DNA of 64,000 bases from Dendrobates tinctorius (Eukaryota). A program made the translations under genes and the position numbers. Shown here one piece after another: positions 17,832 to 35,536 of this stretch (position 1 is the stretch's first letter; every line of letters begins with the position of its first letter). The stretch spans positions 9,052,001-9,116,000 of the forward strand of contig NW_027361875.1 in the NCBI RefSeq assembly GCF_039654945.1. Direction: 5' to 3'. The notes beneath the pieces were generated by a model, which was not told where the DNA came from, searched no databases, and saw nothing but the letters and a program-made list of their open reading frames with translations.

Positions 17832-20638
17832 TATTATTATTATTTATTGTTATAGCGCCATTTATTCCATGGCGCTTTACATGTAAGGAGGGGTATACAT
17901 AATAAAAACAAGTACAATAATGTTAAACAATACAAGTCATAACTGGTACAGGAGGAGAGAGGACCCTGCCCGCGAAGGCTCACAATCTACAAGGGATGGG
18001 TGAGAATACAGTAGGCGAGGGTAGAGCTGGTCATGCAGCGGTTTGGTCGATCAGTGGTTACTGCAGGTTATAGGCTTGTCGGAAGAGGTGGGTCTTCAGG
18101 CTCTTTTTGAAGGTTTCGTTGGTAGGTGAGAGTCTGATATGTTGTGGTAGAGAGTTCCAGAGTAGGGGTGATGCGCGAGAGAAATCTTGTATGCGATTGT
18201 GGGAAGAGGAGATAAGAGGGGAGTAGAGAAGGAGATCTTGTGAGGATCGGAGGTTGCATGCAGGAAAGTACCGGGAGACGAGGTCACAGATGTATGGAGG
18301 AGCCAGGTTGTGGATGGCTTTGTATGTCATGGTTAGGGTTTTGTACTGGAGTCTCTGAGCAATGGGGAGCCAGTGAAGGGATTGACAGAGGGGAGAAGCT
18401 GGGGATTAGCGGGGGGACAGGTGGATTAGTCGGGCAGCAGAGTTTAGAATAGATTGGAGGGGTACGAGAGTGTTCGAGGGGAGGCCACTGAGCAGGAGGT
18501 TGCAGTAGTCAAGGCGAGAGATGATGAGGCAAGGACTAGGGTTTTTGCAGATTTTTGGTTGAGGAATGAACGGATTCATGAAATATTTTTGAATTGAAGT
18601 CGGCAGGAAGTGGAAAGGGCTTGGATATGTGGTTGAAGGAGAAATCAGCATCAAGGATTACCCCGAGGCAGCGAGCTTGTGGGACTGGGGAGAGTGGGCA
18701 GCCATTTACTGTAATGGATAGGTTCGTTGGGGGGGTCACGTGAGACGGGGGAAAGATGATGAATTCTGTTTTGTCCATGTTAAGTTTCAGAAATCTAGCA
18801 GAGAAGAAGGATGAAATAGTGGACAGACATTGGGGGATTCTGGTTAGTAGGGAGGTGATATCTGGTCCAGAGATGTAGATCTGTGTGTCATCAGCATAGA
18901 GATGATACTGAAAGCCATGAGATTCTATGAGCTGTCCCACGCCAAAGGTGTAAATGGAGAAGAGCAGGGGTCCTAGGACTGAACCTTGTGGGACTCCGAC
19001 AGATAGGGGGCGAGGTGAGGAGGTGGTGTGTGAGTGGGAGACGCGGAATGTCCGGTCTGTTATGTATGATGAGATCCAGGATAGGGCCAAGTCTGTGATG
19101 CCAAGGGATGAGAGGGTCTGTAATAATAGGGAATGGTCCACTGTGTCAAAGGCAGCCGACAGGTCCAGGAGGAGGAGGACAGAGTAGTGTCGCTTGCTCT
19201 TGGCGGTTAAGAGGTCATTGGTGACCTTAGTAAGGGCAGTTTCAGTGGAGTGGTGTGACCTGAAGCCAGATTGTAAGCGGTCGAAGAGGGAGCAAGAAGA
19301 GAGATGTGAGGACAGTTCAAGGTAGACGTGTTGTTCCAGTAGCTTGGAGGCATAGGGGAGAAGTGATATAGAGCGATAGCTAGATACAGAGGATGGGTCA
19401 AGAGAGGGCTTTTTGAGGATAGGTGTGATGGAGGCATGTTTAAAGCTTGAGGGGAAAACACCAGTTGTTAGTGATAGGTTGAAGAGATGGGTTAGGGTTG
19501 GGATGAAGACTGTGGTGAGGTTTGGGATGAAGTGGGATGGGATCGGGTCAAGTGCACAGGTGGTGAGATGTGATCTTGAGAGTAGAGTGGAGAGTCGATC
19601 TTCTGTAATGGTGGAGAAGTTGGTTTTGGAGGTGGAGGGCTGGGAAGTCAGGAGGAAGGGCTCTGGGGGTTGTTGACCAAAACTGTCTCTGATGTTATCA
19701 ATCTTCTGCTTGAAAAATGAGGCAAAGTCTTCAGCTGAGATGAGTGGGGAGGGAGGAGGTGCTGGGGGACAGAGGAGAGAATTGATGGTGTTGAATAACT
19801 GTTTAGGGTTGTGAGACAGGGAGGATATGAGAGATGAGAAGTAGGTTTGTTTAGCTGTGGCGAGTGTGGTCTTGAAAGTAGTGAGGGACTGTTTGAATGC
19901 GATGAAGTGCTCGTTGGAGTGGGATCTTTTCCATCTGCGCTCAGCAGCCCTGGAAGCTCGCCTCAGTTCTTTGGTCAGGTTGGTGTGCCAGGGCTGTCTG
20001 TTGATTTTGCGAGCTTTGGTATGTGTAAGTGGGGCAGCAGATTCCAAAGCTACAGCTATTGTGGTGTTATATAGAGCAGCAGCGTCATCCACATTGTGTA
20101 AGGAATTTATATCTGTGAGAGGGAGGAGGGATTCAGAGAATGAGTGTAGGTCAAGGTGTTTAAGATTTCTGCGAGGGTGTGAAAGTTTGTGGGGTGGGGA
20201 TTGTAGACATGGAGTGGAGAGGGAAGAGAATGTGAGAAGGTTGTGGTCAGAGAGAGGAAGAGGTGAGTTAGAGAGGTTAGATAGGGAGCAGAGGCGGGTG
20301 AAGATGAGGTCCAGTCTGTGGCCATCTTTGTGGGTGGCTGTAGAAGACCATTGAGTGAGGCCGAAGGAGGAAGTGAGAGATAGAAGTTTAGTGGCAGCTG
20401 AGAGGGAAGTGTCAGTGGGGATGTTGAAGTCACCCATGATGATAGTAGGGATGTCCGCGGAAAGGAAATGAAGTAGCCAGGTGGTGAAGTGGTCAAAGAA
20501 GGTGGTGGCTGGCCCTGGGGGGCGGTAGATGACAGCCAGTTGGAGGTTGGAGGGGGAGTAGATGCGCACAGAGTGCACCTCAAAGGAAGGGAGGGTAACA
20601 GAGGGTGGCAGTGGGATTGGGGTGAAGGAGCAGGTATC
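17832..20638 (-). mobile_element. L2-clade LINE, 5'-truncated
   Basis: ORF 18536..20578 covers the APE endonuclease C-part (GDFN, SDH) and RT ([12 protein letters not shown]). Downstream frames give ISRLDYCN and FKKSLKTHLF. Ends in a GGCGCTATAACAATAAATAATAAT tail. Confidence 0.95.
18058..20620 (-). pseudogene. L2 ORF2 (endonuclease-reverse transcriptase), frameshifted near the C-terminus
   Basis: 680-aa open frame continued in ORFs 18406..18654 and 18058..18330. Confidence 0.9.
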
Positions 20639-21880
20639 TAAAATATAAACAATCGGTTCAATCTTCAGACTAGAGAGGATTTTTTCATAAGAGGTATATT
20701 GTAAAGTTGCTCTTTTTCACAAACACTTTATAATTTTGCCCATTTCAAAAGTTGAGACAACTCCTTTAACCCCCTAAGGTATTTTCGCTTTTGCGCTTTC
20801 GTTTTTTGCTCGGCTTCTTCCCAGAGCCATAACTTTTTTTATTTTTCCCTCAATATGGCCATGTGAGGGCTTGTTTTTTGCGGGACGAGTTGTACTTTTG
20901 AACGACTCCATTGGTTTTACCATGTCGTGTACTGGAAAATGGGAAAAAAATCCAAGTGCGGTGAAATTGCAAAAAAATGTGCAATCTTACGGTTGTTTTT
21001 TGTTTTGCTTTTTTACTACAGTATGTTCACTAAATGCTAAAACTGACCTGCCATTATGATTCACCAGGTCATTATGAGTTTATAGACACCAAATATGTAT
21101 AGGTTCTTTTCTATCTATGTAGTGAAAAAAAAATTCCAAACTTTGTTAGAAAAAAAAATTGCACCATAGCATATTCATTTTTCATGATCATGGGTTGGGT
21201 GAGGGCTTATTTTTTGCGTGCCAAGCTGACATTTTTAAAGATACCATTTTGGTGGAGATTAGAGTTGAGCGACTTTTGGTTTTTTAGGGTCGCATTTCGT
21301 TTCGTGAAACCCGACTTTTCCAAAAGTCGGGTCGAGCAAGATCGTCCGATTATAGGGAAAAGTCGGGGTCGTCCCGAAACACGAAACCCAATGTAAGTCA
21401 ATGGGGAATAAAAGTCGGCAGTGAGAGGAGGACAGGAAACACACCTACAGTGCCCATTTGAATGCCAAAAGCATCAATTCTTCTTACTTAAGCTTGTCAA
21501 CCTTAATTAACTTCATAATACAAGTTACGCACTGAAAAATGGGGGTTATTTGGCTAAAGTTGTGGGGGGGTAGGGCTGGCTCCAGGTTTTCATGTGCCCT
21601 GGGCGAAAGAGCGCCCCTTTAACACATACCACAACTCATCATGCTCCGATACGGCAGAGAAATAGCGGTATAGTACAATGAAAAATACTTCACTTTTTAC
21701 ATCTCATGACGAGGCCCATCTATTTCTCCATACAGAATCATTGGTCCCATATAATGTTTGAAACAATATATGATGAGCTCCACATAATGCTACAGTATAT
21801 GTTGGTCCCCATGGATGAAGCTCCACTGTCTTATGGGCCCAAATAATGCTCCAAACATAATGGGCCCCATTTCTAATGCT

Positions 21881-22552
21881 CTAGTGTATAATGGGCCCTG
21901 TAAATGCTGCTCCAGTGTCTGATGTCCACCTTTGGAATGTTCCAGTGTATGGTGGGCACCATCTATCATTCTCCAGAGTATAGTGCTCCCCAAAAATTGC
22001 TGTCCCAACATTGAAAACAATCAAATAAGTCTCCTCGCTAGGGAATCCCTGTACTTGTCTGGACTCCTCGTCGTCCCCATCTTCCATCTCACTGCACAGT
22101 ATTTCAACTTTGCAAGTGCTGTGATCCTGAGCAAGCAGGGGGGGGGCCCACTCGTTGGCGACGGCACTGGCACAGGGCCCCTGATAGTACGGTGGTGTGT
22201 CTGATGGCGGGTGGGCCGAACCTGCACTTTCATCTGCAGCTTCCTCTTTGTCACCGTGTAAGATGGAACTGTATATGGGAAGGGTAACCTGAGTTTCATC
22301 AGGGTCAGATTCAGGCCGTGTAGCGTGCAAGGGGAATGTAGTGGTCTGGGTCAATTTACCAGCAGATTCATCGAGCAGTGGCTGGGCATCAGTGCACTTG
22401 TGTCGCCCCCAGGAGTACGGTCGCCACAGTGGCATTACCTTCTTCCTAGGGAGTGTGATGTCATGCTTAGGAGCAACGAACGATCTCTCTAGCAGGTTAA
22501 CTGATTGGGCGGCGTTATTCCCACGAGTCATGACCCTCCAAACAGCGTTCAT
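21881..22552 (-). CDS. Hypothetical 223-aa chimeric ORF inside the hAT element (contains a duplicated transposase N-terminal segment)
   Basis: ATG-initiated ORF. CTDAQPLLDESAGKLTQTTT...DPDETQVTLP...HGDKEE matches transposase CTDAQPLMDDSAGTFTQSTT...DPDETQVPLP...HGDTEE. Expression unknown. Confidence 0.3.
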   Translation of the reverse strand: MNAVWRVMTRGNNAAQSVNLLERSFVAPKHDITLPRKKVMPLWRPYSWGRHKCTDAQPLLDESAGKLTQTTTFPLHATRPESDPDETQVTLPIYSSILHGDKEEAADESAGSAHPPSDTPPYYQGPCASAVANEWAPPLLAQDHSTCKVEILCSEMEDGDDEESRQVQGFPSEETYLIVFNVGTAIFGEHYTLENDRWCPPYTGTFQRWTSDTGAAFTGPIIH

Positions 22553-22979
22553 GAAGGCAAAGTGTTTGTTTTACGTGGGCAGTATGGTTGCAAAGCTGAA
22601 CCTTAAAGGAATGTCAAGAAGGGCACCACCAGGAGTGGAGCCTACGGTTAAATTCGACTCCACCTGGGAAACCTCAACCATGCCAGCTACAGAACAGATG
22701 CACACATTGCAAGCTTAATTCCGTTAACGAACGAGACTCCGTCATGCCCCGCGGTCCGAATCCGGCTTACTAGAGGGACACGTGAGGCTCTGGCACATGA
22801 GATTGGCCAATAACTGGTGTGTCATGCCATTACATGTCCGTGGCTGCATGTGCGCTACACTGAAAAGGCCAGCGTTTGTCGCTTACAGGTGCAGATAACC
22901 CGCTGAACAACGTTAGTGATGGGGATCACTGATGACAATTATTACCCGCGAACAATGATTTCCCAGTAAGTGCAGGTCA
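22479..22979 (+). pseudogene. Diverged 18S rRNA-derived segment (central to 3'-major domain) with internal deletions
   Basis: Colinear near-matches to universal SSU motifs: GGCGGCGTTATTCCCA, AGTATGGTTGCAAAGCTGAA.CTTAAAGGAAT, GAAGGGCACCACCAGGAGTGGAGCCT, TTAATTCCG.TAACGAACGAGACTC, TAGAGGGAC, GCGCTACACTGA, GTGATGGGGATC, TTCCCAGTAAGTGC.GGTCA. Confidence 0.9.
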
Positions 22980-23090
22980 ACCGCAGTTCCGGAATTAGGC
23001 CTAACCGTCATTCCTGAAAAAATGAAAAACTTACGTGTGCAAACCACAGGTGCTGTAGCTTGCTTAACAGCTCGCCAGCCGTTCTCACGC

Positions 23091-24531
23091 CCAGTATGGA
23101 TTGCACGTGAGTGCACAAAGGTTAGAAAGGGTACCGTATCCCCGGATAACATGTATGGATAGCGTACACATTCAAAATATATGTCTGTACATCAGGAGGC
23201 AGGCTCAGACGGTGTTGGGCCCAGTATGGATTGCACGTGATTGCACAAAGGTTAGAAAGGGTACCGTATCCCCAAATAACATGTATGGATAGCGTACACA
23301 TTCAAAATATATGTCTGTAAATCAGGAGGCAGGCTCAGACGGTGTTAGGCCCAGTATGGATTGCACGTGATTGCACAAAGGTTAGAAAGGGTACCATATC
23401 CCCGGATAACATGTATGGATAGCGTACACATTCAAAATATATGTCTGTACATCAGGAGGCAGGCTCAGACGGTGTTGGGCCCAGTATGGATTTCACGTGA
23501 TTGCACAAAGGTTAGAAAGGGTACCATATCCCCAGATAACATGTATGGATAGCGTACACATTCAAAATATATGTCTGTAAATCAGGAGGCAGGCTCAGAC
23601 GGTGTTAGGCCCAGTATGGATTGCACGTGATTGCACAAAGGTTAGAAAGGGTACCGTATCCCCGGATAACATGTATGGATAGCGTACACATTCAAAATAT
23701 ATGTCTATACATCAGGAGGCAGGCTCAGACGGTGTTAGGCCCAGTATGGATTGCACGTGATTGCACAAAGGTTAGAAAGGGTACCGTATCCCCGGATAAC
23801 ATGTATGGATAGCGTACACATTCAAAATATATGTCTGTACATCAGGAGGCAGGCTCAGACGGTGTTAGGCCCAGTATGGATTGCACGTGATTGCACAAAG
23901 GTTAGAAAGGGTACCGTATCCCCGGATAACATGTATGGATAGCGTACACATTCAAAATATATGTCTTTACATCAGGAGGCAGGCTCATACGGTGTTAGGC
24001 CCAGTATGGATTGCACGTGATTGCACAAAGGTTAGAAAGGGTACCGTATCCCCGGATAACATGTATGGATAGCGTACACATTCAAAATATATGTCTATAC
24101 ATCAGGAGGCAGGCTCAGACGGTGTTAGGCCCAGTATGGATTGCACGTGATTGCACAAAGGTTAGAAAGGGTACCGTATCCCCGGATAACATGTATGGAT
24201 AGCGTACACATTCAAAATATATGTCTATACATCAGGAGGCAGGCTCAGACGGTGTTAGGCCCAGTATGGATTGCACGTGATTGCACAAAGGTTAGAAAGG
24301 GTACCGTATCCCCGGATAACATGTATGGATAGCGTACACATTCAAAATATATGTCTGTACATCAGGAGGCAGGCTCAGATGGTGACAGGCACAGTATGGA
24401 TTGCACGTGATTGCACAAAGGTTAGAAAGGGTACCGTATCCCCGGATAACATGTATGGATAGCGTACACATTCAAAATATATGTCTGTACATCAGGAGGC
24501 AGGCTCAGACGGTGTCAGGCACAGTATGGAT
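23091..24531. repeat. 130-bp tandem array, 11 near-identical units
   Basis: Units start every 130 bp from 23091 (CCAGTATGGATTGCACGTGATTGCACAAAGG...) to 24391, with only a few substitutions per unit. Confidence 0.98.
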
Positions 24532-24951
24532 TTGACGGCCCAGATTACACAGCGGAGGAGCAGGGAGAGGTAAAGATTGCAAATGCTGGGGCCCTGCCCA
24601 AGCAAGGGGGGCCCACTCGTGGGCGTCGGTACTGGCACTGGGCCCCTCATAGTACGGCGGTGTGTCTGATGGCGGGTGTGCACCACCACCGTCAGAGACA
24701 CTTGATTGCACTATGAGGGACCCTGTGCCAGTGCCCGCACCCAAGAGTCGGCCTACCCACCTGTCCAGGGCAACGGCACTCGCACGGTGTCGTGCGCTAG
24801 GTGGTGACCCCGGCCATGGGGGGGGAGGCAGCACAGTTAGGGAGTTTTAGAAAGTGGCATATGTTGATGTTGGACATTCAGCTGATGCAAAAGGCGAAAT
24901 AGGTGAAGTCCCAGGAAGAGGTGGACCAAAGCAAGCCATTTTTCTGTCACC

Positions 24952-27900
24952 CTATGTGTCATCAGGGGAAGGTGGGACAAAATCCTTGGAAACCCATGCA
25001 TGGTTCATTTTAATGAAGGTTAGATCATCCACATTTTGGGTTGACAGACGGGTCCTTTTTTCTGTCAGGATTGATCCAGCTGCACTGAAGACTCTTTCCG
25101 ATAGCACACTTGCAGCTGGGCAAGCGAGCTCCTGTAAGGCATATTGGGCCAATTCAGGCCAGGTGTCCAGTTTAGCGGCCCAATAGTCAAAGGGGAATGA
25201 CCTGTGTGGGAGAACATCGATATGGGAGGAAAAGTAGTTTGTAACCATAGTTGACAACTGCTGTCTCCTGTCACTTTCCATCGATGCAGTATTACCAGTT
25301 GTGTGAGCGGTATTTGAAAAATCAGTCCACAACATTGTCATGAAACCCCTGTCTCCAACGCCACTTCTGCTGTGTGCACCACGAACACCTCTGCCAAGCT
25401 GCCCCCAGCCCGTACGGCTCGTGTGAGAACCATCACCGCTGCTGTGTGCTGAGAATGCCTCAAGCAACCGATTTACCAGAGTTGCTTGTTTATTAGCCAA
25501 TATTAGGTCAAGGTACTCCTGTGGCATGATGTTTTGTAATTTGCCTTTATAGCGTGGATCCAGGATGCTGGCCAACCAGTAGTCGTCATCGTTCATCATT
25601 TTGGCAATGCGTGGGTCCCTTTTTAGGATCTGCAAGGCATAATCTGACATGTGGGCCAATGTTCCCGGTGTCAATGATGCACTGCGAGTGCTGGTTGGAG
25701 GAGCACTTTCTGGCAAATCCACATCCCTCCAGTCACGCACAAACCCTGTACCAGACCTTGCCACGCCAACATTTTCACTTGCCCCACGAGATGCATCCTC
25801 CTCCCCTAAGTAATCATCCCCATCATCCTCCTCCTCCTCCTCTTCTTCCTCCACCTCGTCCAGGAGAGGTCCCTGAGCAGACAATGGCTGAATGTCATCA
25901 AGGATTCCCTCCTCCTCCTCCTCCTCCTCATCAACATTGGCTGCAGACGCCTGCTCCTTAAGGTGCGTCAAAGTTTGCATGAGCAGACGCATAAGTGGGA
26001 TGCTCATGCTTAGGATGGCGTCGTCTGTGCTTACCAGCCATGTGCATTCCTCAAAACACTGAAGGACTTTACAGAGGTCTTTCAGCTTCGACCACTGCAC
26101 ACCTGTCAACTCCATGTCTGCTCTCAAAGTGCCTGGCCGTGTATCCTCCCACAAATGCATTATGGCCTGCCTCTGCTCGCACAGCCGCTCCACCATGTGC
26201 AGGGTGGAGTTCCACCTTGTTGCAATGTCGATAATGAGGCGGTGGTTGGGAAGGTGGAGCAATCGCTGCAGCTTCTGCTTACGAACGGAGTGTACAGGCG
26301 ACCGGCGGATGTGCGCGCACAGTCTTCGCACCTTCTGGAGCAGGGCTGTTAACTCCGGATAATTTTTGAGGAAGCACTGCACCACCAGGTTCAAGGTGTG
26401 AGCCAAGCAAGGTATATGGCTGAGTTTTGAAAGGGCTATGGCTGCCACAAAATTACGGCCGTTATCACTAACTACCTTGCCTGCCTCAAGATGTACACTG
26501 CCCAGCCATGACTCAGTTTGTCGCTTCAAGTACTCGGCCAGCACCTCGGCGGTGTGTCTGTTGCCCAAACACATCATCTGCAACACAGCCTGCTGACACT
26601 TTCTACTAGCTGCTCGATAGGTGGACACATCGTGTGCAACAGTGGCAGCTGCAGATGGAGTGCTCGTACGACTGCGCTCTGTGGATGAGCTTTCGCTTCT
26701 GGAGGAGGAGGAGGAGGAGGGTCGAACGCCTACAGCCAACTGTTTCCTATACCGTGGGCTAGGCAGCACTGTCCTACCACCGCTGTCCCCTGTGGACCCT
26801 GCATCCACCACATTAACCCAGTGCGCAGTGATGGACACGTAACGGCCCTGGCCATGCCGACTGGACCATGCATCAGTTGTGAGGTATACCTTTCCGCTCA
26901 CTGACTGCTTGAGTGCATGGACAATGCGGTCTTTCACATGATGGTGGAGGGCTGGGATGGCTTTGCGAGAGAAGAAGTGGCGACTGGGTAGGTCATAGCG
27001 TGGTACTGCATAGGCCATGAGTTCGCGGAAAGCTGTGCTTTCCACCAACCGAAAGGGCATCATCTCAAACGAGATTAGTTTGGCAATGTGGGCGTTCAAA
27101 CCCAGTGTACGCGGATGAGAGACTGAGTACTTTCTTGACCTACTCATAGTGTCTGGGAGGGTGAGCTGGACTTGAGAGCTGCATATGGTGGAAGTAGCGG
27201 TGGACAGGGCGGACTGAGAGAGGGTTGATGATGGTGATGGAGTTGGTGTTCTTTCTGATGGCCTAGAATCAGTCTTTCGTTGATATAACAGTGGGATTCC
27301 CTGACTGCTGTGGCCTTGCAACGACACCTCAACATTTGCTGCTGTGCTAACCGGTGGGCTTACAGTGGGGGAAACAATGTAGCGTTGCTGACTACCTTCG
27401 TTGTGATCAGTTGCACATGTGGCACTTGAGGTTTGGTGTTGTGTCCACGCTTGCAAGTGCATGCTGGTTAAATGTCTAAGTATGCAACTGGTATTCAAAT
27501 TTTTCAGATTTTTCCCTCGGCTAAAGGTCTTTGCGCACTTCTTACAGATAACCTTGGCCTGATCATGAGGATTTTGGTCAAAAAAGTGCCACACTGCACT
27601 CTTCCTACTTTGGCAGACATTTTGCGGCCTAGCACGCTGTGATCTTTTGACCCTCTGGACAAGCTGTCCAGCAACTCTTTTGATGTTTGGAACCTGTCTT
27701 TGGAGTGCTCCGGGCCTGCCAGATAACAGCTGTTGCGATGTCGATGTCTGCTGTGGATGCTCCTCATCTGAGCTATTGGAAGCAGCACCCTCTTCCCCCA
27801 ATGGATGCCAATCTGGGTCAACAACTGGGTCATCCATCACCTCCTTTTCTATGTCATGTGCACCTTCCTCTGTGTCACCGTGTATGGTGGTATAGTGTGA

Positions 27901-28194
27901 GGGAAGGGGCACCTGAGTCTCATCAGGGTCAGAATCTGGCTCTGTACACTGCGAGGACAATGTAGTGCTCTGAGTGAATGTACCAGCAGAATCATCCATC
28001 AGCGGCTGTGCATCAGTGCACTCCATGTCAGATTCATCTTGGCCTGGGTAATTCACCATTTGACTTGATAATCCAGGCATGGTATGTGAAAACAGCTCCA
28101 TGGAGTAATCAGTAGTATGGTCTGCGTCATCCTTCAATCTTGGTTGGGGTGAAGGACACAAGGAAAGGTGTGGTTCATGAACATGAGCCTCCAA
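24952..28194 (-). CDS. hAT transposase (BED zinc finger, DDE core, hATC dimerisation domain; ZBED-like)
   Basis: 1080-codon open frame with SAVWHFF..CKKC..LRHLTSMH (BED), LTTDAW, VSDNG, CLAH, TRWNS and SERVFS. First in-frame ATG at 28101; probable true start is ATG 28496 across a 1-nt frameshift near 28268. Confidence 0.95.
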   Translation of the reverse strand: MEAHVHEPHLSLCPSPQPRLKDDADHTTDYSMELFSHTMPGLSSQMVNYPGQDESDMECTDAQPLMDDSAGTFTQSTTLSSQCTEPDSDPDETQVPLPSHYTTIHGDTEEGAHDIEKEVMDDPVVDPDWHPLGEEGAASNSSDEEHPQQTSTSQQLLSGRPGALQRQVPNIKRVAGQLVQRVKRSQRARPQNVCQSRKSAVWHFFDQNPHDQAKVICKKCAKTFSRGKNLKNLNTSCILRHLTSMHLQAWTQHQTSSATCATDHNEGSQQRYIVSPTVSPPVSTAANVEVSLQGHSSQGIPLLYQRKTDSRPSERTPTPSPSSTLSQSALSTATSTICSSQVQLTLPDTMSRSRKYSVSHPRTLGLNAHIAKLISFEMMPFRLVESTAFRELMAYAVPRYDLPSRHFFSRKAIPALHHHVKDRIVHALKQSVSGKVYLTTDAWSSRHGQGRYVSITAHWVNVVDAGSTGDSGGRTVLPSPRYRKQLAVGVRPSSSSSSRSESSSTERSRTSTPSAAATVAHDVSTYRAASRKCQQAVLQMMCLGNRHTAEVLAEYLKRQTESWLGSVHLEAGKVVSDNGRNFVAAIALSKLSHIPCLAHTLNLVVQCFLKNYPELTALLQKVRRLCAHIRRSPVHSVRKQKLQRLLHLPNHRLIIDIATRWNSTLHMVERLCEQRQAIMHLWEDTRPGTLRADMELTGVQWSKLKDLCKVLQCFEECTWLVSTDDAILSMSIPLMRLLMQTLTHLKEQASAANVDEEEEEEEGILDDIQPLSAQGPLLDEVEEEEEEEEDDGDDYLGEEDASRGASENVGVARSGTGFVRDWRDVDLPESAPPTSTRSASLTPGTLAHMSDYALQILKRDPRIAKMMNDDDYWLASILDPRYKGKLQNIMPQEYLDLILANKQATLVNRLLEAFSAHSSGDGSHTSRTGWGQLGRGVRGAHSRSGVGDRGFMTMLWTDFSNTAHTTGNTASMESDRRQQLSTMVTNYFSSHIDVLPHRSFPFDYWAAKLDTWPELAQYALQELACPAASVLSERVFSAAGSILTEKRTRLSTQNVDDLTFIKMNHAWVSKDFVPPSPDDT

Positions 28195-28572
28195 TGACGA
28201 CTCAGTGCTTTTACTTTTTACAACTGAAGAAGAGGAGGCGATAGAGCTGGAGGCTGAGTCAGCAATTAAGACAAAACTTTTTCCTGATGCTCTGGCTTTA
28301 AAAGCGGTTTGCCAACTCCTACTAAAAAACTAAGCGTTCGAGGCCTTATGTAGCCAGACGATGACGCAGGCTCAACACCTCCTGCATTCGGTCCTATTTT
28401 GCTCTTGCCACTACCATCAGATCCACCACCAACACCATCATTACCAGCTGCCAACCCCCGCCCAATTCCTCGGCCTCTTCCACCAGCCTTCCTCATTTTT
28501 GGTAGAAATGTAGACAAAATCCAACAAACTATATAGTAATGTAAAACAAGGTACAAGGTGTCTATAGGACAG

Positions 28573-29031
28573 GGGAGATTTAGAATTTCTGCAGACACTT
28601 GTGGACACTGGACACTTTTGGATTGTGTGAGGCCCACTGATATCTGAGGGCTATGTGACAGGCTCGATGGCACAGCTGTGACAAAAGTGACGAGAGGATA
28701 AGGGAGATTTTGAATTTCTGCAGACACTTGTGGACACTGGACACTTTTGGATTGTGTGAGGCCCACTGATATCTGAGCGCTATGTCACAGGCTCGATGGC
28801 ACAGCTGTGACAAAAGTGACGAGAGGATAAGGGAGATTTTGAATTTCTGCACTCACTTGTGGACACTGGACACTTTTGGATTGTGTGAGGCCCAATGAAT
28901 ATCTGAGCGCTATGTGACAGGCTCGATGGCACAGCTGTGACCAAAGTGACTAGAGGATAAGGGAGATTTTGAATTTCTGCAGACACTTGTGGACACTGGA
29001 CACTTTTGGATTGTGTGAGGCCCAATGAATA
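28573..29031. repeat. 129/130-bp tandem array, ~3.5 units, immediately upstream of the transposase
   Basis: GGGAGATTT.GAATTTCTGC recurs at 28573, 28702, 28831 and 28961; sequence unrelated to the 23091 array. Confidence 0.95.
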
Positions 29032-29068
29032 CACCAACCCCCGGAAGTGCGTCCCCCAGTCCAGCCCT

Positions 29069-32000
29069 TCAGCGCCGCCCACCGCTGGAGAGAGAGAGCG
29101 GGAGGAGGCGTGCGCGAGACAGGGGGCGGGGGCCAGGAGCCGCCGTGAGGGCGAGTGGACGACGGGCGCGCGCCCGGACGGGAGCGCGCAGGTAAGGAAA
29201 CGCTGCGGTGCGCGCTGCTGCAGAAGGGGCATCGGCGGGCATAGCCGCCGATGTCACAGTACCCCTCTCCTTACGTCCTCCCTTACTGAGATTGGCCAAA
29301 AACTTTTTCAGAATCCGGGGAGCGTTGATATTCTCCAGAGGCTCCCAGGACCTTTCCTCGGGACCAAAACCCACCCAATCGATAAGAAAAAGGGTCTTAC
29401 CCCGGACTCTTTTCATAGCCAAGATGTCCTTGACCTCGAAGACGTTGTCCGAGATAACAGGTGAAGGAGGGACGATGGAAACTGGTTGGAACCGATTCAG
29501 GACTACGGGTTTCAAGAGCGAGACATGGAAAGCGTTGGGAACCCGGAGCGAAGCAGGCAACCTCAGTTTGTAAGCCACTTCATTAATACGTTCAATCACT
29601 TCGAACGGCCCAATGTACCGAGGACTCAGCTTATAAGAGGGAACTCTCAGACGGATATGTCGAGTTGAAAGCCAGACTTTGTCACCTGGATGGTACGGAG
29701 GCACGTCCTTCCGTCTTTTGTCTGCATGTTTCTTGATTCGGTTGTTGGCACCCTTGAGCGCGTCCCTGGTCTCTCTCCAAATCTGCGAGAATTCTTTAGC
29801 AAGAGAATCGGCTGCGGGTACTCCTGTAGACGTGGAGAAAGGCAACGGAATACCTGGGTTTTGACCGGTTACCACAAAAAAAGGTGACTTGGTGGTAGAT
29901 TCACTGGGATGATTATTGTGCGAGAATTCAGCCCAAGGTAAGAGCACGACCCAATTGTCCTGATGGGCGTTGGCGAAGTGACGTAGGAAGGTGGTTAACA
30001 CCTGATTAATTCGCTCGACTTGCCCGTGGGTCTGAGGATGGTATGCGGAGGAGAAGTCGAGAGATGTACCCATAAGCCGGCAGAGAGCCCTCCAGAAGCG
30101 GGAGGTGAACTGGACCCCCCGATCCGACAGAATCCGCTGAGGAAGACCATGCAGCCTGAAGACCTGGTGGATGAAGATCTCGGCCAACTTCGGGGCGGAC
30201 GGTAGTCCCGGTAAGGGAATGAAGTGGGCCATTTTGGAAAAACGATCTGCCACGACTAAGATGGTGGTACATCCGGCTGAGCGGGGTAAATCAGTCACAA
30301 AATCCATGGCGATCTGCTGCCAGGGGACCTCAGGAACTGGCAATGGGTGAAGAAGACCGGCGGGCAAAGTCCTAGCCACCTTGTTCTGGGCACAGATTGT
30401 GCACGAGGCAACATAGTCCATCACATCCTGGCGAAGCGTGGGCCACCAGTAATACCGGGACAGCAGCAAGAGAGTCTTTTTAGTCCCAACGTGTCCAGCA
30501 ATTTTGGAGGAATGCCCCCAGCCCAACACCTCTGTACGTCTGCTTTGAGGGACGAAAGTCTTACCGGGCGGAGGAATAGCAAAATTCACAGGGGCCACGG
30601 TGATCATCTTAGTAGGCTCGATAATATAGGATGGGACTTCATCCTTCTCCGATGACTGTAACGACCTGGAAAGGGCATCGGCCTTGATGTTCCTATTACC
30701 AGGTCGAAAGTGAAGTTGGAAGTCAAAGCGGGAGAAATACAGGGCCCACCTGGCTTGCCGGGCATTGAGTCTTTGGGCAGACTGCAGGTAAGCCAGGTTC
30801 TTGTGGTCCGTGAGGATGGTAAAGGGATGTACAGCCCCCTCGAGTAAATACCGCCATTCAGCCAAGGCCATCTTAATGGCCAGTAATTCTCGGTCTCCAA
30901 TGGAGTAGTTGCACTCCGCAGGTGAAAAGACTTTAGAAAAGAAGCCGCAAGGAACCAGCCGCCCGGATGAAGCCTGCTGGGACAGGACCGCCCCCGCTCC
31001 AGTGGAGGAGGCATCCACTTCCAGGACGAAGGGCCTGCTGGTCACAGGCCGATGCAAAATGGGTGCTGACGCAAAAGAACGTTTCAGAGCTTGGAAAGCG
31101 TTTTCAGCTTCAGGAGACCAGCTGTTGGGCTTCGTTCCCTTATGGGTCAAGACCGTGATGGGTTTGGTAACCGTGGAAAAATGAGGCACAAACTGACGGT
31201 AATAATTTGCGAACCCAAGAAACCGCTGGATGGCCTTAATCCCCACTGGACGGGGCCACTTGAGTACCACACTGAGTTTTTCGGGATCCATCTTTAGACC
31301 GGAATCGGTGACGACATATCCCAAGAAGGGCAGTGACGACTGCTCAAAAAGGCATTTCTCAATCTTGGCGTAGAGTTGGTTCTCTCGAAGGCGGTGCAAG
31401 ACCAAGCGTACGCTTTTGCGATGGGAGGACAGATCGGGCGAGAAAACGAGAATGTCGTCCAGATAGATGACCACACAGGAATAGAGTAGATCCCGGAATA
31501 TCTCGTTGATAAATTCTTGAAACACAGCGGGGGCATTGCAAAGGCCGAATGGCATGACTAGGTATTCATAATGCCCGTCACGGGTATTGAAGGCCGTTTT
31601 CCACTCATCCCCAGCACGGATCCGGACCAAATTGTAGGCTCCCCGCAGATCTAACTTCGTGAAGATCCGGGCTCCTCTCAGCCGGTCAAAGAGCTCCGGA
31701 ATCAACGGAAGGGGGTAACGATTTTTAACGGTGATATTGTTTAGACCCCGGTAATCAATGCAAGGCCGCAGTGATCCATCTTTCTTCCGGACGAAGAAGA
31801 AACCCGCGCCCGCAGGAGAGGAGGACTTCCGGATAAACCCCTTGGACAGATTTTCATGGATATATTCCGTCATGGCAGAGGTCTCGGCAGGAGAAAGAGG
31901 GTATGTTCTACCTCTGGGAGGAACCGCTCCAGGAATCAGGTCGATGGGGCAGTCATAGGACCGGTGCGGGGGCAGGGAGTCCGCCTCCTTCTTGCAGAAA

Positions 32001-32527
32001 ACATCAGCGTAGGCGTGGTATGGAACAGGAAGGCCGGGGAGGTCCGTTGGCCTAAGCTGAGAATGGGAACGAACCAGGGTACGTAAACAGCTTGCATGGC
32101 AGGTGTGCCCCCAGCGCAGGATCTCTCCGGAGCGCCAGTCGACAACTGGCTTATGCCGCCTAAGCCAAGGTAGTCCCAAGAGAATGGCGTGGGATAATTG
32201 AGGCAGGACATAAAAGGCAATCTTCTCAGAATGAAGTGCGCCAAGTTGTAGTTTTACTTCAGTGGTAACCGTGGTGATGAGCCCAGGAAGAGGTTTGCCA
32301 TCGACGGAGGTGATTGCTCGAGGGTTACTTAAGACGACCACGGGAATCTGGAGTTTGTCAACCTCCTCCTGGCGGATGAAGTTGCCTGCTGCGCCCGAGT
32401 CCACATACGCCTCCACAGAGCCACGCCCCCGACCTGTAATAAGCAGAGCTGAAAGAGTAAGTGGGAGAAAGGGGGTCTGATCACCTAGGGGGCCCTCTCC
32501 TACCTGGCCTAGGCGGATGCGTTTCCC
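29069..32527 (-). CDS. Gypsy Pol (protease, RT, RNase H, integrase, chromodomain), entered by -1 frameshift
   Basis: DSGA, YLDD, DAS, HHCC, DDE, GPF and chromodomain (FEVKDIL...IDWVGFGPEERSWEP). The frame is open from the GGGAAAC heptamer at 32527-32521. Confidence 0.95.
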   Translation of the reverse strand, partial: GKRIRLGQVGEGPLGDQTPFLPLTLSALLITGRGRGSVEAYVDSGAAGNFIRQEEVDKLQIPVVVLSNPRAITSVDGKPLPGLITTVTTEVKLQLGALHSEKIAFYVLPQLSHAILLGLPWLRRHKPVVDWRSGEILRWGHTCHASCLRTLVRSHSQLRPTDLPGLPVPYHAYADVFCKKEADSLPPHRSYDCPIDLIPGAVPPRGRTYPLSPAETSAMTEYIHENLSKGFIRKSSSPAGAGFFFVRKKDGSLRPCIDYRGLNNITVKNRYPLPLIPELFDRLRGARIFTKLDLRGAYNLVRIRAGDEWKTAFNTRDGHYEYLVMPFGLCNAPAVFQEFINEIFRDLLYSCVVIYLDDILVFSPDLSSHRKSVRLVLHRLRENQLYAKIEKCLFEQSSLPFLGYVVTDSGLKMDPEKLSVVLKWPRPVGIKAIQRFLGFANYYRQFVPHFSTVTKPITVLTHKGTKPNSWSPEAENAFQALKRSFASAPILHRPVTSRPFVLEVDASSTGAGAVLSQQASSGRLVPCGFFSKVFSPAECNYSIGDRELLAIKMALAEWRYLLEGAVHPFTILTDHKNLAYLQSAQRLNARQARWALYFSRFDFQLHFRPGNRNIKADALSRSLQSSEKDEVPSYIIEPTKMITVAPVNFAIPPPGKTFVPQSRRTEVLGWGHSSKIAGHVGTKKTLLLLSRYYWWPTLRQDVMDYVASCTICAQNKVARTLPAGLLHPLPVPEVPWQQIAMDFVTDLPRSAGCTTILVVADRFSKMAHFIPLPGLPSAPKLAEIFIHQVFRLHGLPQRILSDRGVQFTSRFWRALCRLMGTSLDFSSAYHPQTHGQVERINQVLTTFLRHFANAHQDNWVVLLPWAEFSHNNHPSESTTKSPFFVVTGQNPGIPLPFSTSTGVPAADSLAKEFSQIWRETRDALKGANNRIKKHADKRRKDVPPYHPGDKVWLSTRHIRLRVPSYKLSPRYIGPFEVIERINEVAYKLRLPASLRVPNAFHVSLLKPVVLNRFQPVSIVPPSPVISDNVFEVKDILAMKRVRGKTLFLIDWVGFGPEERSWEPLENINAPRILKKFLANLSKGGRKERGTVTSAAMPADAPSAAARTAAFPYLRAPVRARARRPLALTAAPGPRPLSRARLLPLSLSSGGRR

Positions 32528-33534
32528 GGTCTCTCAGGACAAGTGCGTACGAAGTGATTGGCCCCTCCACAATATAGACAGAGTCCCTTAGTCATCCTCT
32601 CCTTACGCCGTTGTTCGGACAGCTTGATGCGATCCACCTGCATAGGCTCGGGGGCAGTGTTACTAGGGAGAGCAACGGTGCGCGGAATGGGAGCTTGGTA
32701 TAATCTAAAGGGCCTCTTCTCCCTGGCTGACTCTCTAGCGCGTTCCTGAAAATGCAGGTCAATACGAGTAGCCAGGGAGATGAGATCTTCCAGGGTGGTA
32801 GGAAGGTCACGCCCGGCCAACTCGTCTTTGATTTTACTAGAAAGGCCTCTCCAAAAGGCACCAACCAGGGCTTCGTTATTCCACCCCAGCTCCGAGGACA
32901 AGGTCCGGAAACGGATGGCGTATTGCCCTACCGTAAGGGACCCCTGGCAGAGGTTAAAAAGGGCCTCTGTAGAGGAAGCAAGGCGTCCGGGTTCATCAAA
33001 AACCTTACGGAATGTTTCCAAAAAACTCTGGATGTTAGTCACCACCGGGTCATCCCTCTCCCACAACGGATTCACCCAAGCCAACGCCTCCCCCTCTAGA
33101 TGGGAGATTATAAAGGCCACCTTAGCACGGTCCGTGGGGTATTGTTGGGGCAGAAGATCAAAGTGCAATCTGCACTGGTTTAAAAATCCCCTACACAATT
33201 TTGGGTCCCCACAGTACCTAGGCGGCTTACCAAGACGGGGAGGAGGGAAAGAGACAGCGTCCCGGGCTTGGGTAGAAGCGGCCGCAGAGGACTGCAAAGA
33301 AAGCAGCCGATCATCCACGGACGCCATATACCCCAAAATGTGAGATTGCGCATCGCGCTGCTGTGCGAGCTCCTGCTGGAGACTGACTAAGAGAGGTGCA
33401 TGCGCTGGGTCAGCGGTTTGCAGGGCGGAGAGCCGGGTGTCCATGGACTTCATGAATGACATGATACGGGTCTGATTCTCTCTTAGGAAAAGCAGTTCCT
33501 TTTGAGTGGCAGCCGCGGCACCGGCGGGGTCCAT
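32509..33534 (-). CDS. Gypsy Gag (PEG10/RTL-like capsid with CCHC knuckle)
   Basis: 341 aa: PPRYCGDPKLCRGFLNQC, QGSLTVGQYAIRF (MHR-like), PEPMQVD, CLYCGGANHFVRTC. Confidence 0.95.
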   Translation of the reverse strand: MDPAGAAAATQKELLFLRENQTRIMSFMKSMDTRLSALQTADPAHAPLLVSLQQELAQQRDAQSHILGYMASVDDRLLSLQSSAAASTQARDAVSFPPPRLGKPPRYCGDPKLCRGFLNQCRLHFDLLPQQYPTDRAKVAFIISHLEGEALAWVNPLWERDDPVVTNIQSFLETFRKVFDEPGRLASSTEALFNLCQGSLTVGQYAIRFRTLSSELGWNNEALVGAFWRGLSSKIKDELAGRDLPTTLEDLISLATRIDLHFQERARESAREKRPFRLYQAPIPRTVALPSNTAPEPMQVDRIKLSEQRRKERMTKGLCLYCGGANHFVRTCPERPGNASA

Positions 33535-33547
33535 GGCCTGATGATAC

Positions 33548-34244
33548 TGTAACGCTGAGGAGAAACTACGTCAGAGAGTGGACCCTCTGGATCGCGGAAC
33601 CGGAGCCCCTGGGCCGAGCACGCCAGGTGAAGACCGACCCCTATACAGGGATCGTTTGGGGCAGGACCACAGAGGACGGAGGCGCGACAGCCGGAACCAA
33701 GAGGGACGGCTCCATGGACAAAAGGGCTGGGGAGGCAGCGGACCGAGATACGAGCAGGGACAGGTAGCACAGGGAAAGACACAATACGGGAAATGGCAAG
33801 GGGAAGAACCAGGGCGAACTGGAGACAGAGGAAGGGCACAGGGGATGGAAAGGCAGCAGCGCCTGGCAGACTGGGGAGGACGAGGGGAACGAGGCTGAGG
33901 ACGGCAGGGAGTATAAGGCAGAGAAAGGTAAAGCTACAGGAGAACTGTAGAGGCCAGAGGGTGCAGAAAACTACACAATCATCAGGCGTCCTCCTAACAG
34001 CGAGGACGCCTGAAATACACCAACCCCCGGAAGTGCGTCCCCCAGTCCAGCCCTTCAGCGCCGCCCACCGCTGGAGAGAGAGAGCGGGAGGAGGCGTGCG
34101 CCAGACAGAGGGCGGGGGCCAGGAGCCGCCGTGAGGGCAAGTGGACGACGGGCGCGCGCCCGGACGGGAGCGCGCAGGTAAGGAAACGCTGCGGTGCGCG
34201 CTGCTGCAGAAGGGGCATCGGCGGGCATAGCCGCCGATGTCACA
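33548..34244 (-). repeat. Gypsy 5' LTR (697 bp)
   Basis: TG...CA ends; its first ~230 nt match 29031..29258 with 3 differences seen by eye. Confidence 0.93.
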
Positions 34245-34550
34245 ATAGCCTCCCCTTGCACTACACACACAGTGACTGGTGTGTTGTGCAGGCCAAATCG
34301 CTAGCAGCAGAAGCAGTTTTTTTTTCTTCTCAGCAGGACAAAAAAAAAAAATTGGGATTGCTTTTAAAAAAGCAGTTTGCGGAGCAGTGGGTAAACAGCA
34401 ATGCAGGAATGTCAGGAAGCCTTAGAAGGCAGCCCAACAACCAACACCACTGATACACCACTATATAGCCTCCCCTTGCACTGCACACACAGTGACTGGT
34501 GTGTTGTGCAGGCCAAATCGCTAGCAGCAGAAGCAGTTTTTTTGTCTTCT
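34245..34550. repeat. 220-bp period direct repeat in the hAT 5' subterminal region
   Basis: ATAGCCTCCCCTTGCACT.CACACACAGTGACTGG... at 34245 and 34465. Confidence 0.85.
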
Positions 34551-34616
34551 TCCCTGCCTAACGCTCTCCCTACAGAATCAGCAGCAACCTCTCCCTATAC
34601 TGAGATCGGCAGAAGT

Positions 34617-34761
34617 AAGATGGCGGTCGGCGTGCACGCCCTTTTATACCCCCTGTGACGCCCACCAAAGCAAGCCAATCACTTGCATGCCCTTCTGAAA
34701 GATGGTGGTGACCCCTGCCTATGTCATCACATTGCCCACAGTGTCCGTGGATCCTGATTGG
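34617..34761 (-). promoter_or_regulatory. Putative Pol II promoter of the hAT element
   Basis: CCAAT boxes at 34757-61 and 34675-79, TATAAAA at 34648-42 and YY1-type CCGCCATCTT at 34626-17, oriented toward the transposase. Confidence 0.6.
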
Positions 34762-35536
34762 CTGAAAAAGAGCGCAAAACAAACTTTTGAAACGTGACTT
34801 TGGCGCGTAAGTCGCCGACCTTGTGGCCGACCTCATCCTAGGGTCGAGTTTCGTTTCATGAAACCCGACTTTGCCAAAAGTCGGCGACTTTTGAAATTTT
34901 TCGACCCGTTTCGCTCAACTCTAGTGGAGATACAAACTTTTGATTGCCCGTTATTGCATTTTAATACAATGTCGGGGCGAACAAAAAAAGCAATTCTGGC
35001 GTTTTTACTTTTTTTTCTTGTTACGCCGTTTAGTAATCGGGTTAATCCTCTTTTTTATTGATAGATTGGGCTATTATGAACGTGGCAATAACAAATATGT
35101 GTACGTCTGATTCTATTTGTTTTATTTTTTATGAGGCGAAAGGGGGTGATTTGAACTTTTATTGTTTTTTGTTTTTTAAAACATTTTTTTAATTTTGGCA
35201 TGCTTCAATAGTCTCCATGGGAGACTAGAAGCTGCCATAACCTGATGATCAGATCGCCTGTATGAAGCAGAATTGCTGGCTTGCTATGAGTGCCAAAAAC
35301 TGGCATCTACAATCGTAGAGGTCTGCAGGAGACCTCTGGCTGTCATGACAACCCATCGGCGACCCACGATAAGGTGACGGGGTCACCGATGGGCTGATTT
35401 TCAACGCGAAGCGCACCCCTGGAGCCCACATCAAAGGGAGGCTGTCCGACATCGGCGTATTATTATGCACAATGTCGGAAAGAGGTTAAGAACTCTACAC
35501 CCACCATTAAAACGGGAGTTAGGAGGTTAATATGAA

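What the first reader, a model, noticed from the sequence alone, without database searches (positions are those of the whole stretch)
21260..34923. Modular giant hAT transposon: transposase bracketed by ~130-bp arrays, followed by a hairpin, antisense 18S rRNA cargo and a chimeric second ORF
Seen, reading the minus strand inside one TIR/TSD-bounded unit: promoter, 220-bp repeat, nested Gypsy, 129-bp array, 1080+ aa transposase, long stem-loop, 11x130-bp array, antisense 18S-derived segment, 223-codon ORF, TIR. Established: typical autonomous hATs are ~3-5 kb with a transposase and short subterminal motifs. Inference: the perfect TSD, homogeneous arrays and unbroken catalytic ORF indicate a recent insertion, so the non-coding modules probably travel with the family. 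They may form an RNA-level accessory system (structured RNA, repeat array and rRNA-complementary segment) that I do not recognise as described.
Basis: partly seen in the sequence, partly recalled or inferred. Interest (0 to 1): 0.85.

Follow-up and report, generated by a model that had tools for sequence, protein, structure and literature searches.

The report
Frog hAT transposon with repeat-array leader
This is one slightly damaged copy of a very abundant poison-frog hAT "cut-and-paste" transposon whose odd modules are inherited family parts; only the upstream repeat array shows a functional signature, as a long start-codon-free leader of the transposase message.

Summary
These are the 13-bp TIRs, a perfect 8-bp TSD, a nested Ty3/Gypsy, the 129-bp and 130-bp arrays, a BED/hAT transposase ORF, a long hairpin, an antisense 18S fragment and a 223-codon ORF.

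Five related elements from two Ranitomeya species keep the same module order. A sixth, from a hAT family only 38% identical in protein, keeps the array-transposase-array bracket. Array sequences differ between genera.

- **Upstream array:** in all copies, a conserved CCAAT/TATA block is followed by 0.9-4.7 kb holding 5 sense ATGs against 209 antisense ones. This run ends at the ancestral start codon (MRKSGGRGRG...), so the array looks like a uAUG-free 5' leader.
- **18S piece:** decayed, multi-copy in this genome, present in a second coded species, absent from all Ranitomeya copies.
- **ORF223:** a chance frame over an old partial duplicate of the transposase N-terminus plus a hairpin arm. It has stops in a Ranitomeya copy and dN/dS of about 0.7-0.95.
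- **Hairpin:** an old palindrome with no RNA-strand signature.
- **This copy:** the Gypsy interrupts its leader and a frameshift breaks the N-terminal extension.

The proposed RNA-level accessory system is not supported. The scan has noted this family on other DNA before. I found no paper describing it.

The parts
21252..21259 (.). Target-site duplication GTGGAGAT, 3' side of the element
   Evidence: Identical 8 bp at 34924-34931
21260..21272 (-). 3' terminal inverted repeat (TAGAGTTGAGCGA read inward)
   Evidence: The Ranitomeya relatives carry TAGGGTTGAGCGA
21273..22097 (-). 3' tail. Subterminal AAGTCGG/CCGACTT motifs lie at about 21276-21418. The stretch 21602-22097 has no Ranitomeya counterpart
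   Evidence: The motif occurs only in the terminal ~160 bp of both ends. 21260-21602 is 81% identical to the Ranitomeya tails
22098..22216 (-). H': partial copy of the hairpin (loop plus 3' arm). The 5' arm is lost in this lineage
   Evidence: 85% identical to 24577-24681. The Ranitomeya H' copies keep both arms
22230..22398 (-). A': old direct copy of the transposase N-terminal coding segment (original at 27854-28022)
   Evidence: 80% to the original, but 85-86% to the Ranitomeya A' copies, so it is older than the split. It has stops in Rv1 and dN/dS 0.7-0.95
21881..22552 (-). 223-codon ORF spanning A' and H'; judged a chance frame
   Evidence: No Pfam hit. No ORF of 90 aa or more in the Ranitomeya tails. 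Neutral evolution
22577..23008 (+). Decayed 18S rRNA fragment (model positions 1118-1666 of 1831), antisense to the transposase
   Evidence: Rfam 92 bits, with internal deletions and many broken pairs. Multi-copy in the genome. Absent from Ranitomeya copies
23076..24545 (-). 3' tandem array, 130 bp x about 11
   Evidence: No ATG depletion. The unit is not structured. No clear similarity to Ranitomeya 3' arrays
24590..24775 (-). Hairpin H, a long imperfect palindrome about 200 nt after the stop codon
   Evidence: -123.9 kcal/mol, z = -9.8. Present in all relatives. No strand bias in wobble mismatches
24952..28194 (-). Transposase ORF as it stands (first ATG at 28101, 1049 aa): BED zinc finger, catalytic core, hAT dimerisation domain
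   Evidence: Pfam. Hermes alignment with conserved catalytic D, RWNS and SERVFS motifs. TTDAWSS motif in the translation
28195..28496 (-). Ancestral N-terminal extension (MRKAGGRGRG..., start codon at 28496-28494), put out of frame by a one-base length difference near 28267
   Evidence: Continuous ORF in the R. imitator copies; alignment shows a 1-nt gap in this copy
28511..29025 (-). 5' tandem array, 129 bp x about 4; ATG-free on the sense strand; part of the inferred 5' leader
   Evidence: 0 sense ATG (6.6 expected) against 8 antisense. Same pattern in all relatives
29026..34250 (-). Nested Ty3/Gypsy chromovirus-type LTR retrotransposon, same orientation as the transposase, interrupting the leader
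   Evidence: LTRs 29028-29264 and 34014-34250, 97-98% identical. gag, PR, RT, RNase H, integrase, chromodomain. No target duplication seen
34251..34619 (-). Upstream part of the inferred leader, containing the 86-nt repeat at 220-bp spacing (34245-34330 and 34465-34550)
   Evidence: No sense ATG between element position 236 and the Gypsy
34620..34910 (-). 5' subterminal region and promoter-like block: CCAAT 34757-34761, inverted CCAAT 34675-34679, TATAAA 34643-34648
   Evidence: Near-invariant in five copies from three species (alignment A3)
34911..34923 (-). 5' terminal inverted repeat
34924..34931 (.). Target-site duplication GTGGAGAT, 5' side

Best explanation
The region is one copy of a very abundant hAT DNA transposon family of a dendrobatid frog. 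Earlier scan notes name the dyeing poison frog.

Shown:
- The family architecture is inherited and old. Its order is: TIR, CCAAT/TATA promoter block, tandem array, transposase gene, palindrome, second tandem array, a relic duplicate of the gene's N-terminus joined to a second palindrome, subterminal motifs, TIR.
- The upstream array lies between the conserved promoter block and the ancestral start codon, and it is almost free of sense-strand ATG.

Inferred:
- The upstream array is transcribed as a 0.9-4.7 kb 5' leader that is kept free of upstream start codons. Its repeat sequence turns over quickly.
- The downstream array, palindrome, duplicated fragment (and the 223-codon ORF across it) and 18S fragment are passively carried. 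They sit in a tolerant 3' non-coding region and probably arose by slippage, template switching and filler capture during break repair after excision.
- The 18S piece entered this variable slot only in the Dendrobates-side lineage and has since decayed.
- This copy is probably not autonomous any more. A Gypsy element splits its leader, and a one-base length change takes the first ~77 codons out of frame.
For: - hAT identity: 8-bp TSD and 13-bp TIRs; BED and hAT C-terminal domains; catalytic motifs aligned to Hermes.
- Family-wide modules: 38,852 DNA contigs cover every bin of the tail. Contigs from other runs bridge ORF223 through the 18S piece to the array edge (22466-23074) with 6 mismatches.
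- Conserved order in R. variabilis (L001, L002; L002 has its own perfect TSD) and R. imitator (L003, L004).
- Leader: CCAAT/TATAAA block conserved. From about 25 nt after the TATA to the MRK start codon, sense ATG counts are 0/896 (this copy), 0/1163, 2/4717, 1/1860 and 2/3831 nt. Antisense ATG counts total 209. Stops occur in all frames.
- The same ATG-free array lies immediately upstream of an RG-rich start in a hAT only 38% identical: L005, 0 ATG in 1500 nt.
- Relic status of the tail parts: A' stops and dN/dS 0.7-0.95. G-T 33 against A-C 37 in the palindromes, and arm complementarity of 71-78% close to the H/H' identity of about 74%. Array units fold at z = +1.4 to +1.9. The 18S piece has deletions and broken pairs and is absent in Ranitomeya.
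- Damage in this copy.
Against: - No transcript start, strand or level was measured. The runs laid were contigs, and their RNA status is a guess.
- ATG counts inside a tandem array are not independent observations. The effective sample is one unit per lineage, although five lineages, diverged sub-repeats and a distant family all agree.
- The persistence of a 3' array and a palindrome in every lineage, including a family at 38% identity, is not explained by pure neutrality.
- RNAalifold found 8 of 67 hairpin pairs with two-sided changes.
- No canonical AATAAA/ATTAAA lies anywhere after the stop codon in this copy, so the 3' end of the message is unknown.
Confidence: 0.72

Rival explanations
1. 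The 3' modules (hairpin, array, antisense 18S) are a selected RNA-level accessory system. For example, a hairpin or long 3' UTR could feed small-RNA pathways or pair with rRNA.
For: - The hairpin is very stable and is retained in two paralogous copies across genera, with some two-sided pair changes.
- A 3' array is present in every relative, including a distant family.
- Contigs of the tail occur in small contig sets that may be transcriptomes, from four studies.
Against: - The 18S piece is lineage-specific and decayed.
- The palindromes show no wobble asymmetry.
- H' lost an arm in this lineage.
- Array units are unstructured and not conserved in sequence.
- In one run guessed to be RNA (X9), contigs run from varied flanks into the element end. 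That fits read-through of embedded copies (table 7).
Confidence: 0.07
2. The architecture is a fossil composite (macrotransposon). A full element and an internally deleted derivative (N-terminus joined to hairpin, Ds-like) fused head-to-tail. The 3' array would be the second unit's own upstream array, so both arrays share one positional origin.
For: - A'-H' looks exactly like a deletion derivative of the A...H gene, in direct orientation, and each copy is preceded by an array.
- The arrangement predates the Dendrobates-Ranitomeya element split: A' is closer to the Ranitomeya A' (85-86%) than to its own A (80%).
Against: - No TIR or subterminal-motif remnants lie between H and A'.
- The 5' and 3' array units are not similar to each other.
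- The 3' array shows no ATG depletion in most copies.
- Template switching during gap repair would give the same A'-H' junction.
Confidence: 0.15
3. The 5' arrays are not a leader. They would be an intron, or promoter or enhancer monomers like the mouse L1 5' UTR, and the ATG depletion would be a side effect of composition.
For: - Tandem monomers with promoter activity are known in mouse L1 5' UTRs (PMC9022269).
- Array length varies widely between copies.
Against: - The depletion is specific to ATG on the sense strand: CAT, CTG and GTG are common.
- It begins just after a conserved TATA box and ends exactly at the conserved start codon. An intron would not need this.
- The arrays are CpG-poor, with observed/expected 0.22-0.32, unlike CpG-rich promoter monomers.
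- An enhancer role in addition to the leader role is not excluded.
Confidence: 0.06

Closest known systems
Autonomous hAT transposons (Ac of maize, Hermes of housefly, Tol2 of medaka)
   Same: - 8-bp target duplication, short TIRs and subterminal short-motif clusters.
- A single transposase with BED finger, DDE/RW catalytic core and C-terminal hAT dimerisation domain. Hermes is the best solved-structure match.
- From general knowledge, Ac has a long untranslated leader and Tol2 has internal inverted repeats.
   Different: - Size is 8.4 kb without the Gypsy and 9-14 kb in relatives, against about 3-5 kb for typical hATs.
- Kilobase tandem arrays lie on both sides of the gene.
- It carries an internal relic duplicate of its own N-terminus plus palindrome.
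- It has an RG-rich N-terminal extension.
- It carries an rRNA fragment.
Mouse L1 5' UTR monomers
   Same: A mobile element whose 5' UTR is built of tandem repeats of about 200 bp that vary in number and are replaced by unrelated types between lineages (PMC9022269, abstract).
   Different: - L1 is a retrotransposon whose monomers are themselves the CpG-rich promoter.
- Here a separate conserved CCAAT/TATA block lies upstream, and the arrays are CpG-poor.
- Their only measured signature is the absence of upstream ATG.
Tandem repeats carried inside DNA transposons (Helentron/DINE central tandem repeats, Tetris, MITE-derived satellites such as Xstir and miDNA4 in Xenopus)
   Same: Mobile elements that propagate internal tandem arrays through a genome (review PMC9659126).
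   Different: Those cases are mostly non-autonomous elements with one central array. Here an autonomous-type hAT has two positionally conserved arrays, one under a leader-type constraint.
Host-fragment capture by DNA transposons (filler DNA or transduplication during gap repair; rRNA-derived SINE heads). Comparison from general knowledge
   Same: A fragment of a host gene is carried and multiplied as non-coding cargo.
   Different: The cargo is a 0.43-kb piece of 18S rRNA. I found no report of such cargo in a DNA transposon.

Membership tests
hAT superfamily DNA transposon | 8-bp target-site duplication | tested here: met
   GTGGAGAT on both sides. The relative L002 has CTAGGGAC on both sides
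hAT superfamily DNA transposon | Short terminal inverted repeats (about 10-25 bp) | tested here: met
   13 of 13 bp, TAGAGTTGAGCGA
hAT superfamily DNA transposon | Transposase with BED zinc finger and C-terminal hAT dimerisation domain | tested here: met
   PF02892 at 5.8e-11 and PF05699 at 8.6e-12, both above the curated cut-offs
hAT superfamily DNA transposon | Catalytic D, D, E and the RW motif of the RNase-H-like core | tested here: met
   VSDNGRNF, RWNS and SERVFS align with Hermes. TTDAWSS was identified by eye in the translation; this first Asp was not aligned by a tool
hAT superfamily DNA transposon | Autonomy: a complete, expressible transposase gene in this copy | tested here: not met
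   The leader is interrupted by the Gypsy, and the ancestral N-terminal extension is frameshifted. Activity from the internal ATG cannot be excluded
Ty3/Gypsy chromovirus (the nested element) | LTRs flanking gag and a PR-RT-RNaseH-INT pol with a C-terminal chromodomain | tested here: met
Ty3/Gypsy chromovirus (the nested element) | 4-6 bp target duplication at the insertion | tested here: not met
   The flanks CCCAA and ATAGC do not match. There may have been a rearrangement at the junction
Functional 18S rRNA gene | Full-length SSU with intact helices | tested here: not met
   Only model positions 1118-1666 of 1831 are present, with internal deletions and many non-standard pairs
microRNA precursors mir-306 / MIR8670 (weak Rfam hits on the hairpin) | Score at or above the family's gathering threshold | tested here: not met
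   35.6 bits against 52, and 35.8 against 150
L1-type monomeric promoter/5' UTR (functional analogy only) | Tandem repeats located in the transcribed 5' UTR | tested here: inconclusive
   Position and ATG depletion fit, but no transcript data exist
L1-type monomeric promoter/5' UTR (functional analogy only) | CpG-rich monomers with promoter activity | tested here: not met
   CpG observed/expected 0.22-0.32 in the 5' arrays. Promoter activity is not testable here

The most novel reading that the evidence does not exclude
The array bracket is a selected design of a whole clade of frog hAT transposons. In this reading, a kilobase-scale, rapidly replaceable tandem-repeat leader kept free of upstream AUGs tunes transcription or translation of a transposase with an RG-rich, possibly RNA-binding N-terminus. 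The conserved palindrome plus 3' array would form a 3' processing or self-limiting small-RNA module. That would be a cis-regulatory architecture not described for DNA transposons.
Probability: 0.2. Interest if true: 0.65.

Novelty: new variant of a known kind. Interest (0 to 1): 0.4.

Why it matters
hAT elements make up about 4% of this 6-Gb genome, and the genome paper describes them only at superfamily level (PMC11152451).

- **Annotation:** knowing the family's real structure explains the many false '18S' hits and interspersed 130-bp 'satellite' arrays. It also stops ORF223-type frames being called as genes.
- **Biology:** the ATG-free tandem-repeat leader is shared by hAT families only 38% identical. 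It is a clear, testable case of selection on the untranslated region of a DNA transposon, and a possible parallel to mouse L1 monomers.
- **What is ordinary:** the rest of the '3' system' appears to be ordinary baggage.

Tried and rejected
- **18S in relatives:** Rfam at gathering threshold, sensitive blastn and nhmmer found none in L001-L004.
- **ORF223 as a gene:** no Pfam hit, not conserved, neutral dN/dS.
- **Hairpin as an RNA under selection:** the apparent G-U excess in the RNAalifold table disappeared in a strand-neutral palindrome count, 33 against 37. The miRNA hits are below threshold.
- **Structured array units:** z-scores are positive or near zero.
- **Remote homology between Dendrobates and Ranitomeya arrays:** z is at most 4.8, against 15-40 within Ranitomeya. 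This is at best marginal.
- **Internal TIR or subterminal remnants for a composite origin:** none found.
- **The 22062-to-23046 joint (983 nt skipped) as an intron:** the ends are not GT-AG or CT-AC in any register and share 2 nt of microhomology, so it is a DNA deletion variant.
- **Poly(A) signal after the stop codon:** none found, but the absence is not statistically meaningful.
- **Other copies inside the 64-kb window:** none.
- **Literature:** searches for hATs with internal arrays, rRNA capture by DNA transposons and poison-frog hATs gave no description of this family.
- The runs were contigs with coded organisms, so expression, strand and copy number remain unmeasured. The species name rests on earlier scan notes; my own evidence is that the best protein hits are Ranitomeya.

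Full report
**Observation**

Reading the minus strand, the unit 21260-34923 is bounded by perfect 13-bp inverted repeats (TAGAGTTGAGCGA) and a perfect 8-bp duplication GTGGAGAT.

- A nested Ty3/Gypsy element at about 29026-34250. Its LTRs are 97-98% identical, and it encodes gag and a PR-RT-RNaseH-integrase-chromodomain pol.
- A 129-bp array at 28511-29025.
- A 1080-codon ORF at 24952-28194 with BED finger and hAT dimerisation domains. Its catalytic motifs align with Hermes transposase.
- A 186-nt hairpin at 24590-24775, at -123.9 kcal/mol and z = -9.8.
- A 130-bp x 11 array at 23076-24545 with 97% matches.
- A 432-nt match to eukaryotic SSU rRNA positions 1118-1666 on the plus strand, so antisense to the transposase. 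It scores 92 bits, E = 7e-24.
- A 223-codon ORF at 21881-22552.

It reads through an 80% copy (A', 22230-22398) of transposase codons about 59-114, and then an 85-91% copy (H', 22098-22216) of the loop and one arm of the hairpin.

**Do the modules belong to the family?**

The transposase's best database relatives are Ranitomeya (poison frog) proteins at about 70% identity. I fetched four loci from R. variabilis (L001, L002) and R. imitator (L003, L004).
- Each holds an element 75-81% identical in DNA.
- L002 has its own TIRs and a perfect 8-bp TSD.
- All keep the order: 5' end, tandem array(s), transposase, hairpin, tandem array(s), A', H', tail.
- A' is closer to the Ranitomeya A' copies (85-86%) than to its own parent segment (80%). 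The internal duplication therefore predates the split of these element lineages.
- The Ranitomeya 3' arrays are homologous to one another (z = 27-30).
- No array of the window's element shows clear similarity to a Ranitomeya array (z at most 4.8).
- None of the Ranitomeya copies has the 18S piece.

Within the source organism the evidence comes from one reads call.
- A DNA run laid 38,852 contigs on the 2.1-kb tail (21200-23300).
- Every bin was covered, including the 18S piece and the array edge.
- Near-identical contigs from runs of three other studies tile the tail and bridge ORF223, the 18S piece and the array edge in the same order. One example covers 22466-23074 with 6 mismatches in 609 nt.
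- A second coded species also carries the 18S piece and the array edge at about 93-94% identity.

So the modules are not private to this locus. The 18S piece is specific to one side of the family.

**The one module with a functional signature**

An alignment of the first ~600 nt of five copies shows a nearly invariant block. It holds a CCAAT box, an inverted CCAAT box and GGGCTATAAAGGGGCG.
- In this copy the TATAAA is at 34643-34648.
- Sense-strand ATGs occur only upstream of this block.

From about 25 nt after the TATA box to the conserved start codon of the family's full-length protein (MRKSGGRGRG...), sense ATG counts are as follows:

| Copy | Sense ATGs | Leader length (nt) |
|---|---|---|
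| This copy, Gypsy excluded | 0 | 896 |
| Rv1 (L001) | 0 | 1163 |
| Rv2 (L002) | 2 | 4717 |
| Ri3 (L003) | 1 | 1860 |
| Ri4 (L004) | 2 | 3831 |

- The same stretches hold 209 antisense ATGs, many CTG and GTG, and stops in all frames.
- The 5' arrays fill most of these stretches and end about 15 nt before the start codon (array to 28511, start codon at 28496).
- The 3' arrays are not depleted in most copies.
- A hAT family only 38% identical in protein (L005) shows the same layout. It has a 261-bp array with no ATG in the 1500 nt before an RG-rich start (MKKAVSKARGRGRG...), and a 166-bp x 20 array downstream of the gene.

I infer that the 5' array is transcribed as a long 5' leader kept free of upstream start codons. 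Its repeat sequence is free to turn over.

One caveat applies. Units of one array are not independent observations, so the strength lies in agreement across lineages with different units. An earlier scan note on another copy (s1-382824) suggested this idea. I tested it here and extended it to two other species and a distant family.

**The remaining modules look like relics**

- **A' and ORF223:** A' has two in-frame stops in one Ranitomeya copy. Its dN/dS against the window's copy is 0.7-0.95, compared with 0.38 for the catalytic part of the transposase. No ORF of 90 aa or more exists in the Ranitomeya tails.
- **Hairpin:** it is conserved as a palindrome in H and H'. RNAalifold reports 8 of 67 pairs with two-sided changes.
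  - A strand-neutral count finds G-T 33 against A-C 37.
  - Arm complementarity (71-78%) is about the same as the H/H' identity (about 74%).
  - This lineage's H' has lost an arm.
  - All of this fits an old palindrome decaying neutrally.
- **Array units:** they fold no better than shuffles.
- **18S piece:** it has internal deletions and many broken pairs.
- **Origin of A'-H':** the junction looks like a Ds-type internal deletion of the gene. It may come from template switching in gap repair, or from an ancient fusion of a full and a deleted element. I found no internal TIR or subterminal-motif remnants to support the fusion.

**State of this copy**

- The Gypsy lies in the leader, in the same orientation as the transposase, without a recognisable target duplication.
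- The N-terminal extension is out of frame because of a one-base length difference near 28267. A different one-base difference breaks it in L001.
- The Gypsy LTRs differ at 6 positions plus one gap.
- The tail differs from the family majority at 12 or more positions in 2.1 kb.

The insertion is young but not brand new, and the copy is unlikely to be autonomous.

**Expression**

Small contig sets of the same organism from four studies hold about two thirds of the tail's words. Their RNA status is only guessed.
- In one of them (X9), contigs run from varied flanks into the element end. That fits read-through of embedded copies.
- A variant that skips 22063-23045 is relatively far more prominent in those sets than in the DNA run. 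Its ends are not splice-like and show 2-nt microhomology, so it is a DNA deletion variant.
- Strand, start and level could not be measured.

**Comparison and novelty**

Membership in the hAT superfamily is met on every sequence criterion tested.

The genome paper for the dyeing poison frog reports hAT at 3.91% of the assembly (265,361 pieces) without structural description (PMC11152451). My literature searches found no description of this architecture or of 18S cargo in a DNA transposon.

Tandem repeats inside mobile elements are well known (PMC9659126). The nearest functional analogy for the leader is the monomeric 5' UTR of mouse L1 (PMC9022269). However, the arrays here are CpG-poor and sit downstream of a separate promoter block.

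I class this as a new variant of a known kind. The scan has already met this family on other DNA (notes s1-382824, s1-366800, s1-366797).

Noticed in passing
window 28195-28496; L003:12067-14943; L004:19137 onward: The family's full-length transposase starts about 135 aa upstream of the ORF's first ATG, with an Arg/Gly-rich segment (MRKSGGRGRGRGRS). A hAT only 38% identical (L005:10001) also starts with an RG-rich segment. This may be an RNA- or DNA-binding RGG box.
   Followed up: partly
window 22063-23045: A deletion variant joins 22062 to 23046, so it lacks H', A' and the 18S piece. It occurs in the DNA run and is relatively much more prominent in two small contig sets that may be transcriptomes.
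   Followed up: partly
window 29021-29030 and 34240-34255: The nested Gypsy shows no matching target-site duplication. Six bases (ATAGCC) follow both LTR copies, which suggests a rearrangement at a junction.
   Followed up: partly
window 21602-22097: About 500 bp of the tail has no counterpart in any Ranitomeya copy. It is either an insertion in this lineage or a deletion in the other. It supplies the C-terminal third of ORF223.
   Followed up: no
window 18536-20578 (-): A LINE fragment with endonuclease and reverse-transcriptase domains lies about 0.7 kb from the hAT's 3' end.
   Followed up: no
window 35538-35805: Tandem repeats of 46 bp and 31 bp lie just outside the element's 5' flank.
   Followed up: no
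L005:3084-4776: 146-148-bp arrays depleted of CAT, meaning they are ATG-free on the minus strand. Their unit is the reverse complement of the L002-type leader unit. This is probably another element's leader in the opposite orientation, so the strand asymmetry could be used to find such leaders.
   Followed up: no
L001:1713-7255: The R. variabilis element in L001 seems to carry a ~5.5-kb insertion right after its 5' TIR. The outer flanks match at 7 of 8 TSD positions.
   Followed up: no
window 55007-55158: A run of 152 N (assembly gap or masked stretch). Left untouched.
   Followed up: no
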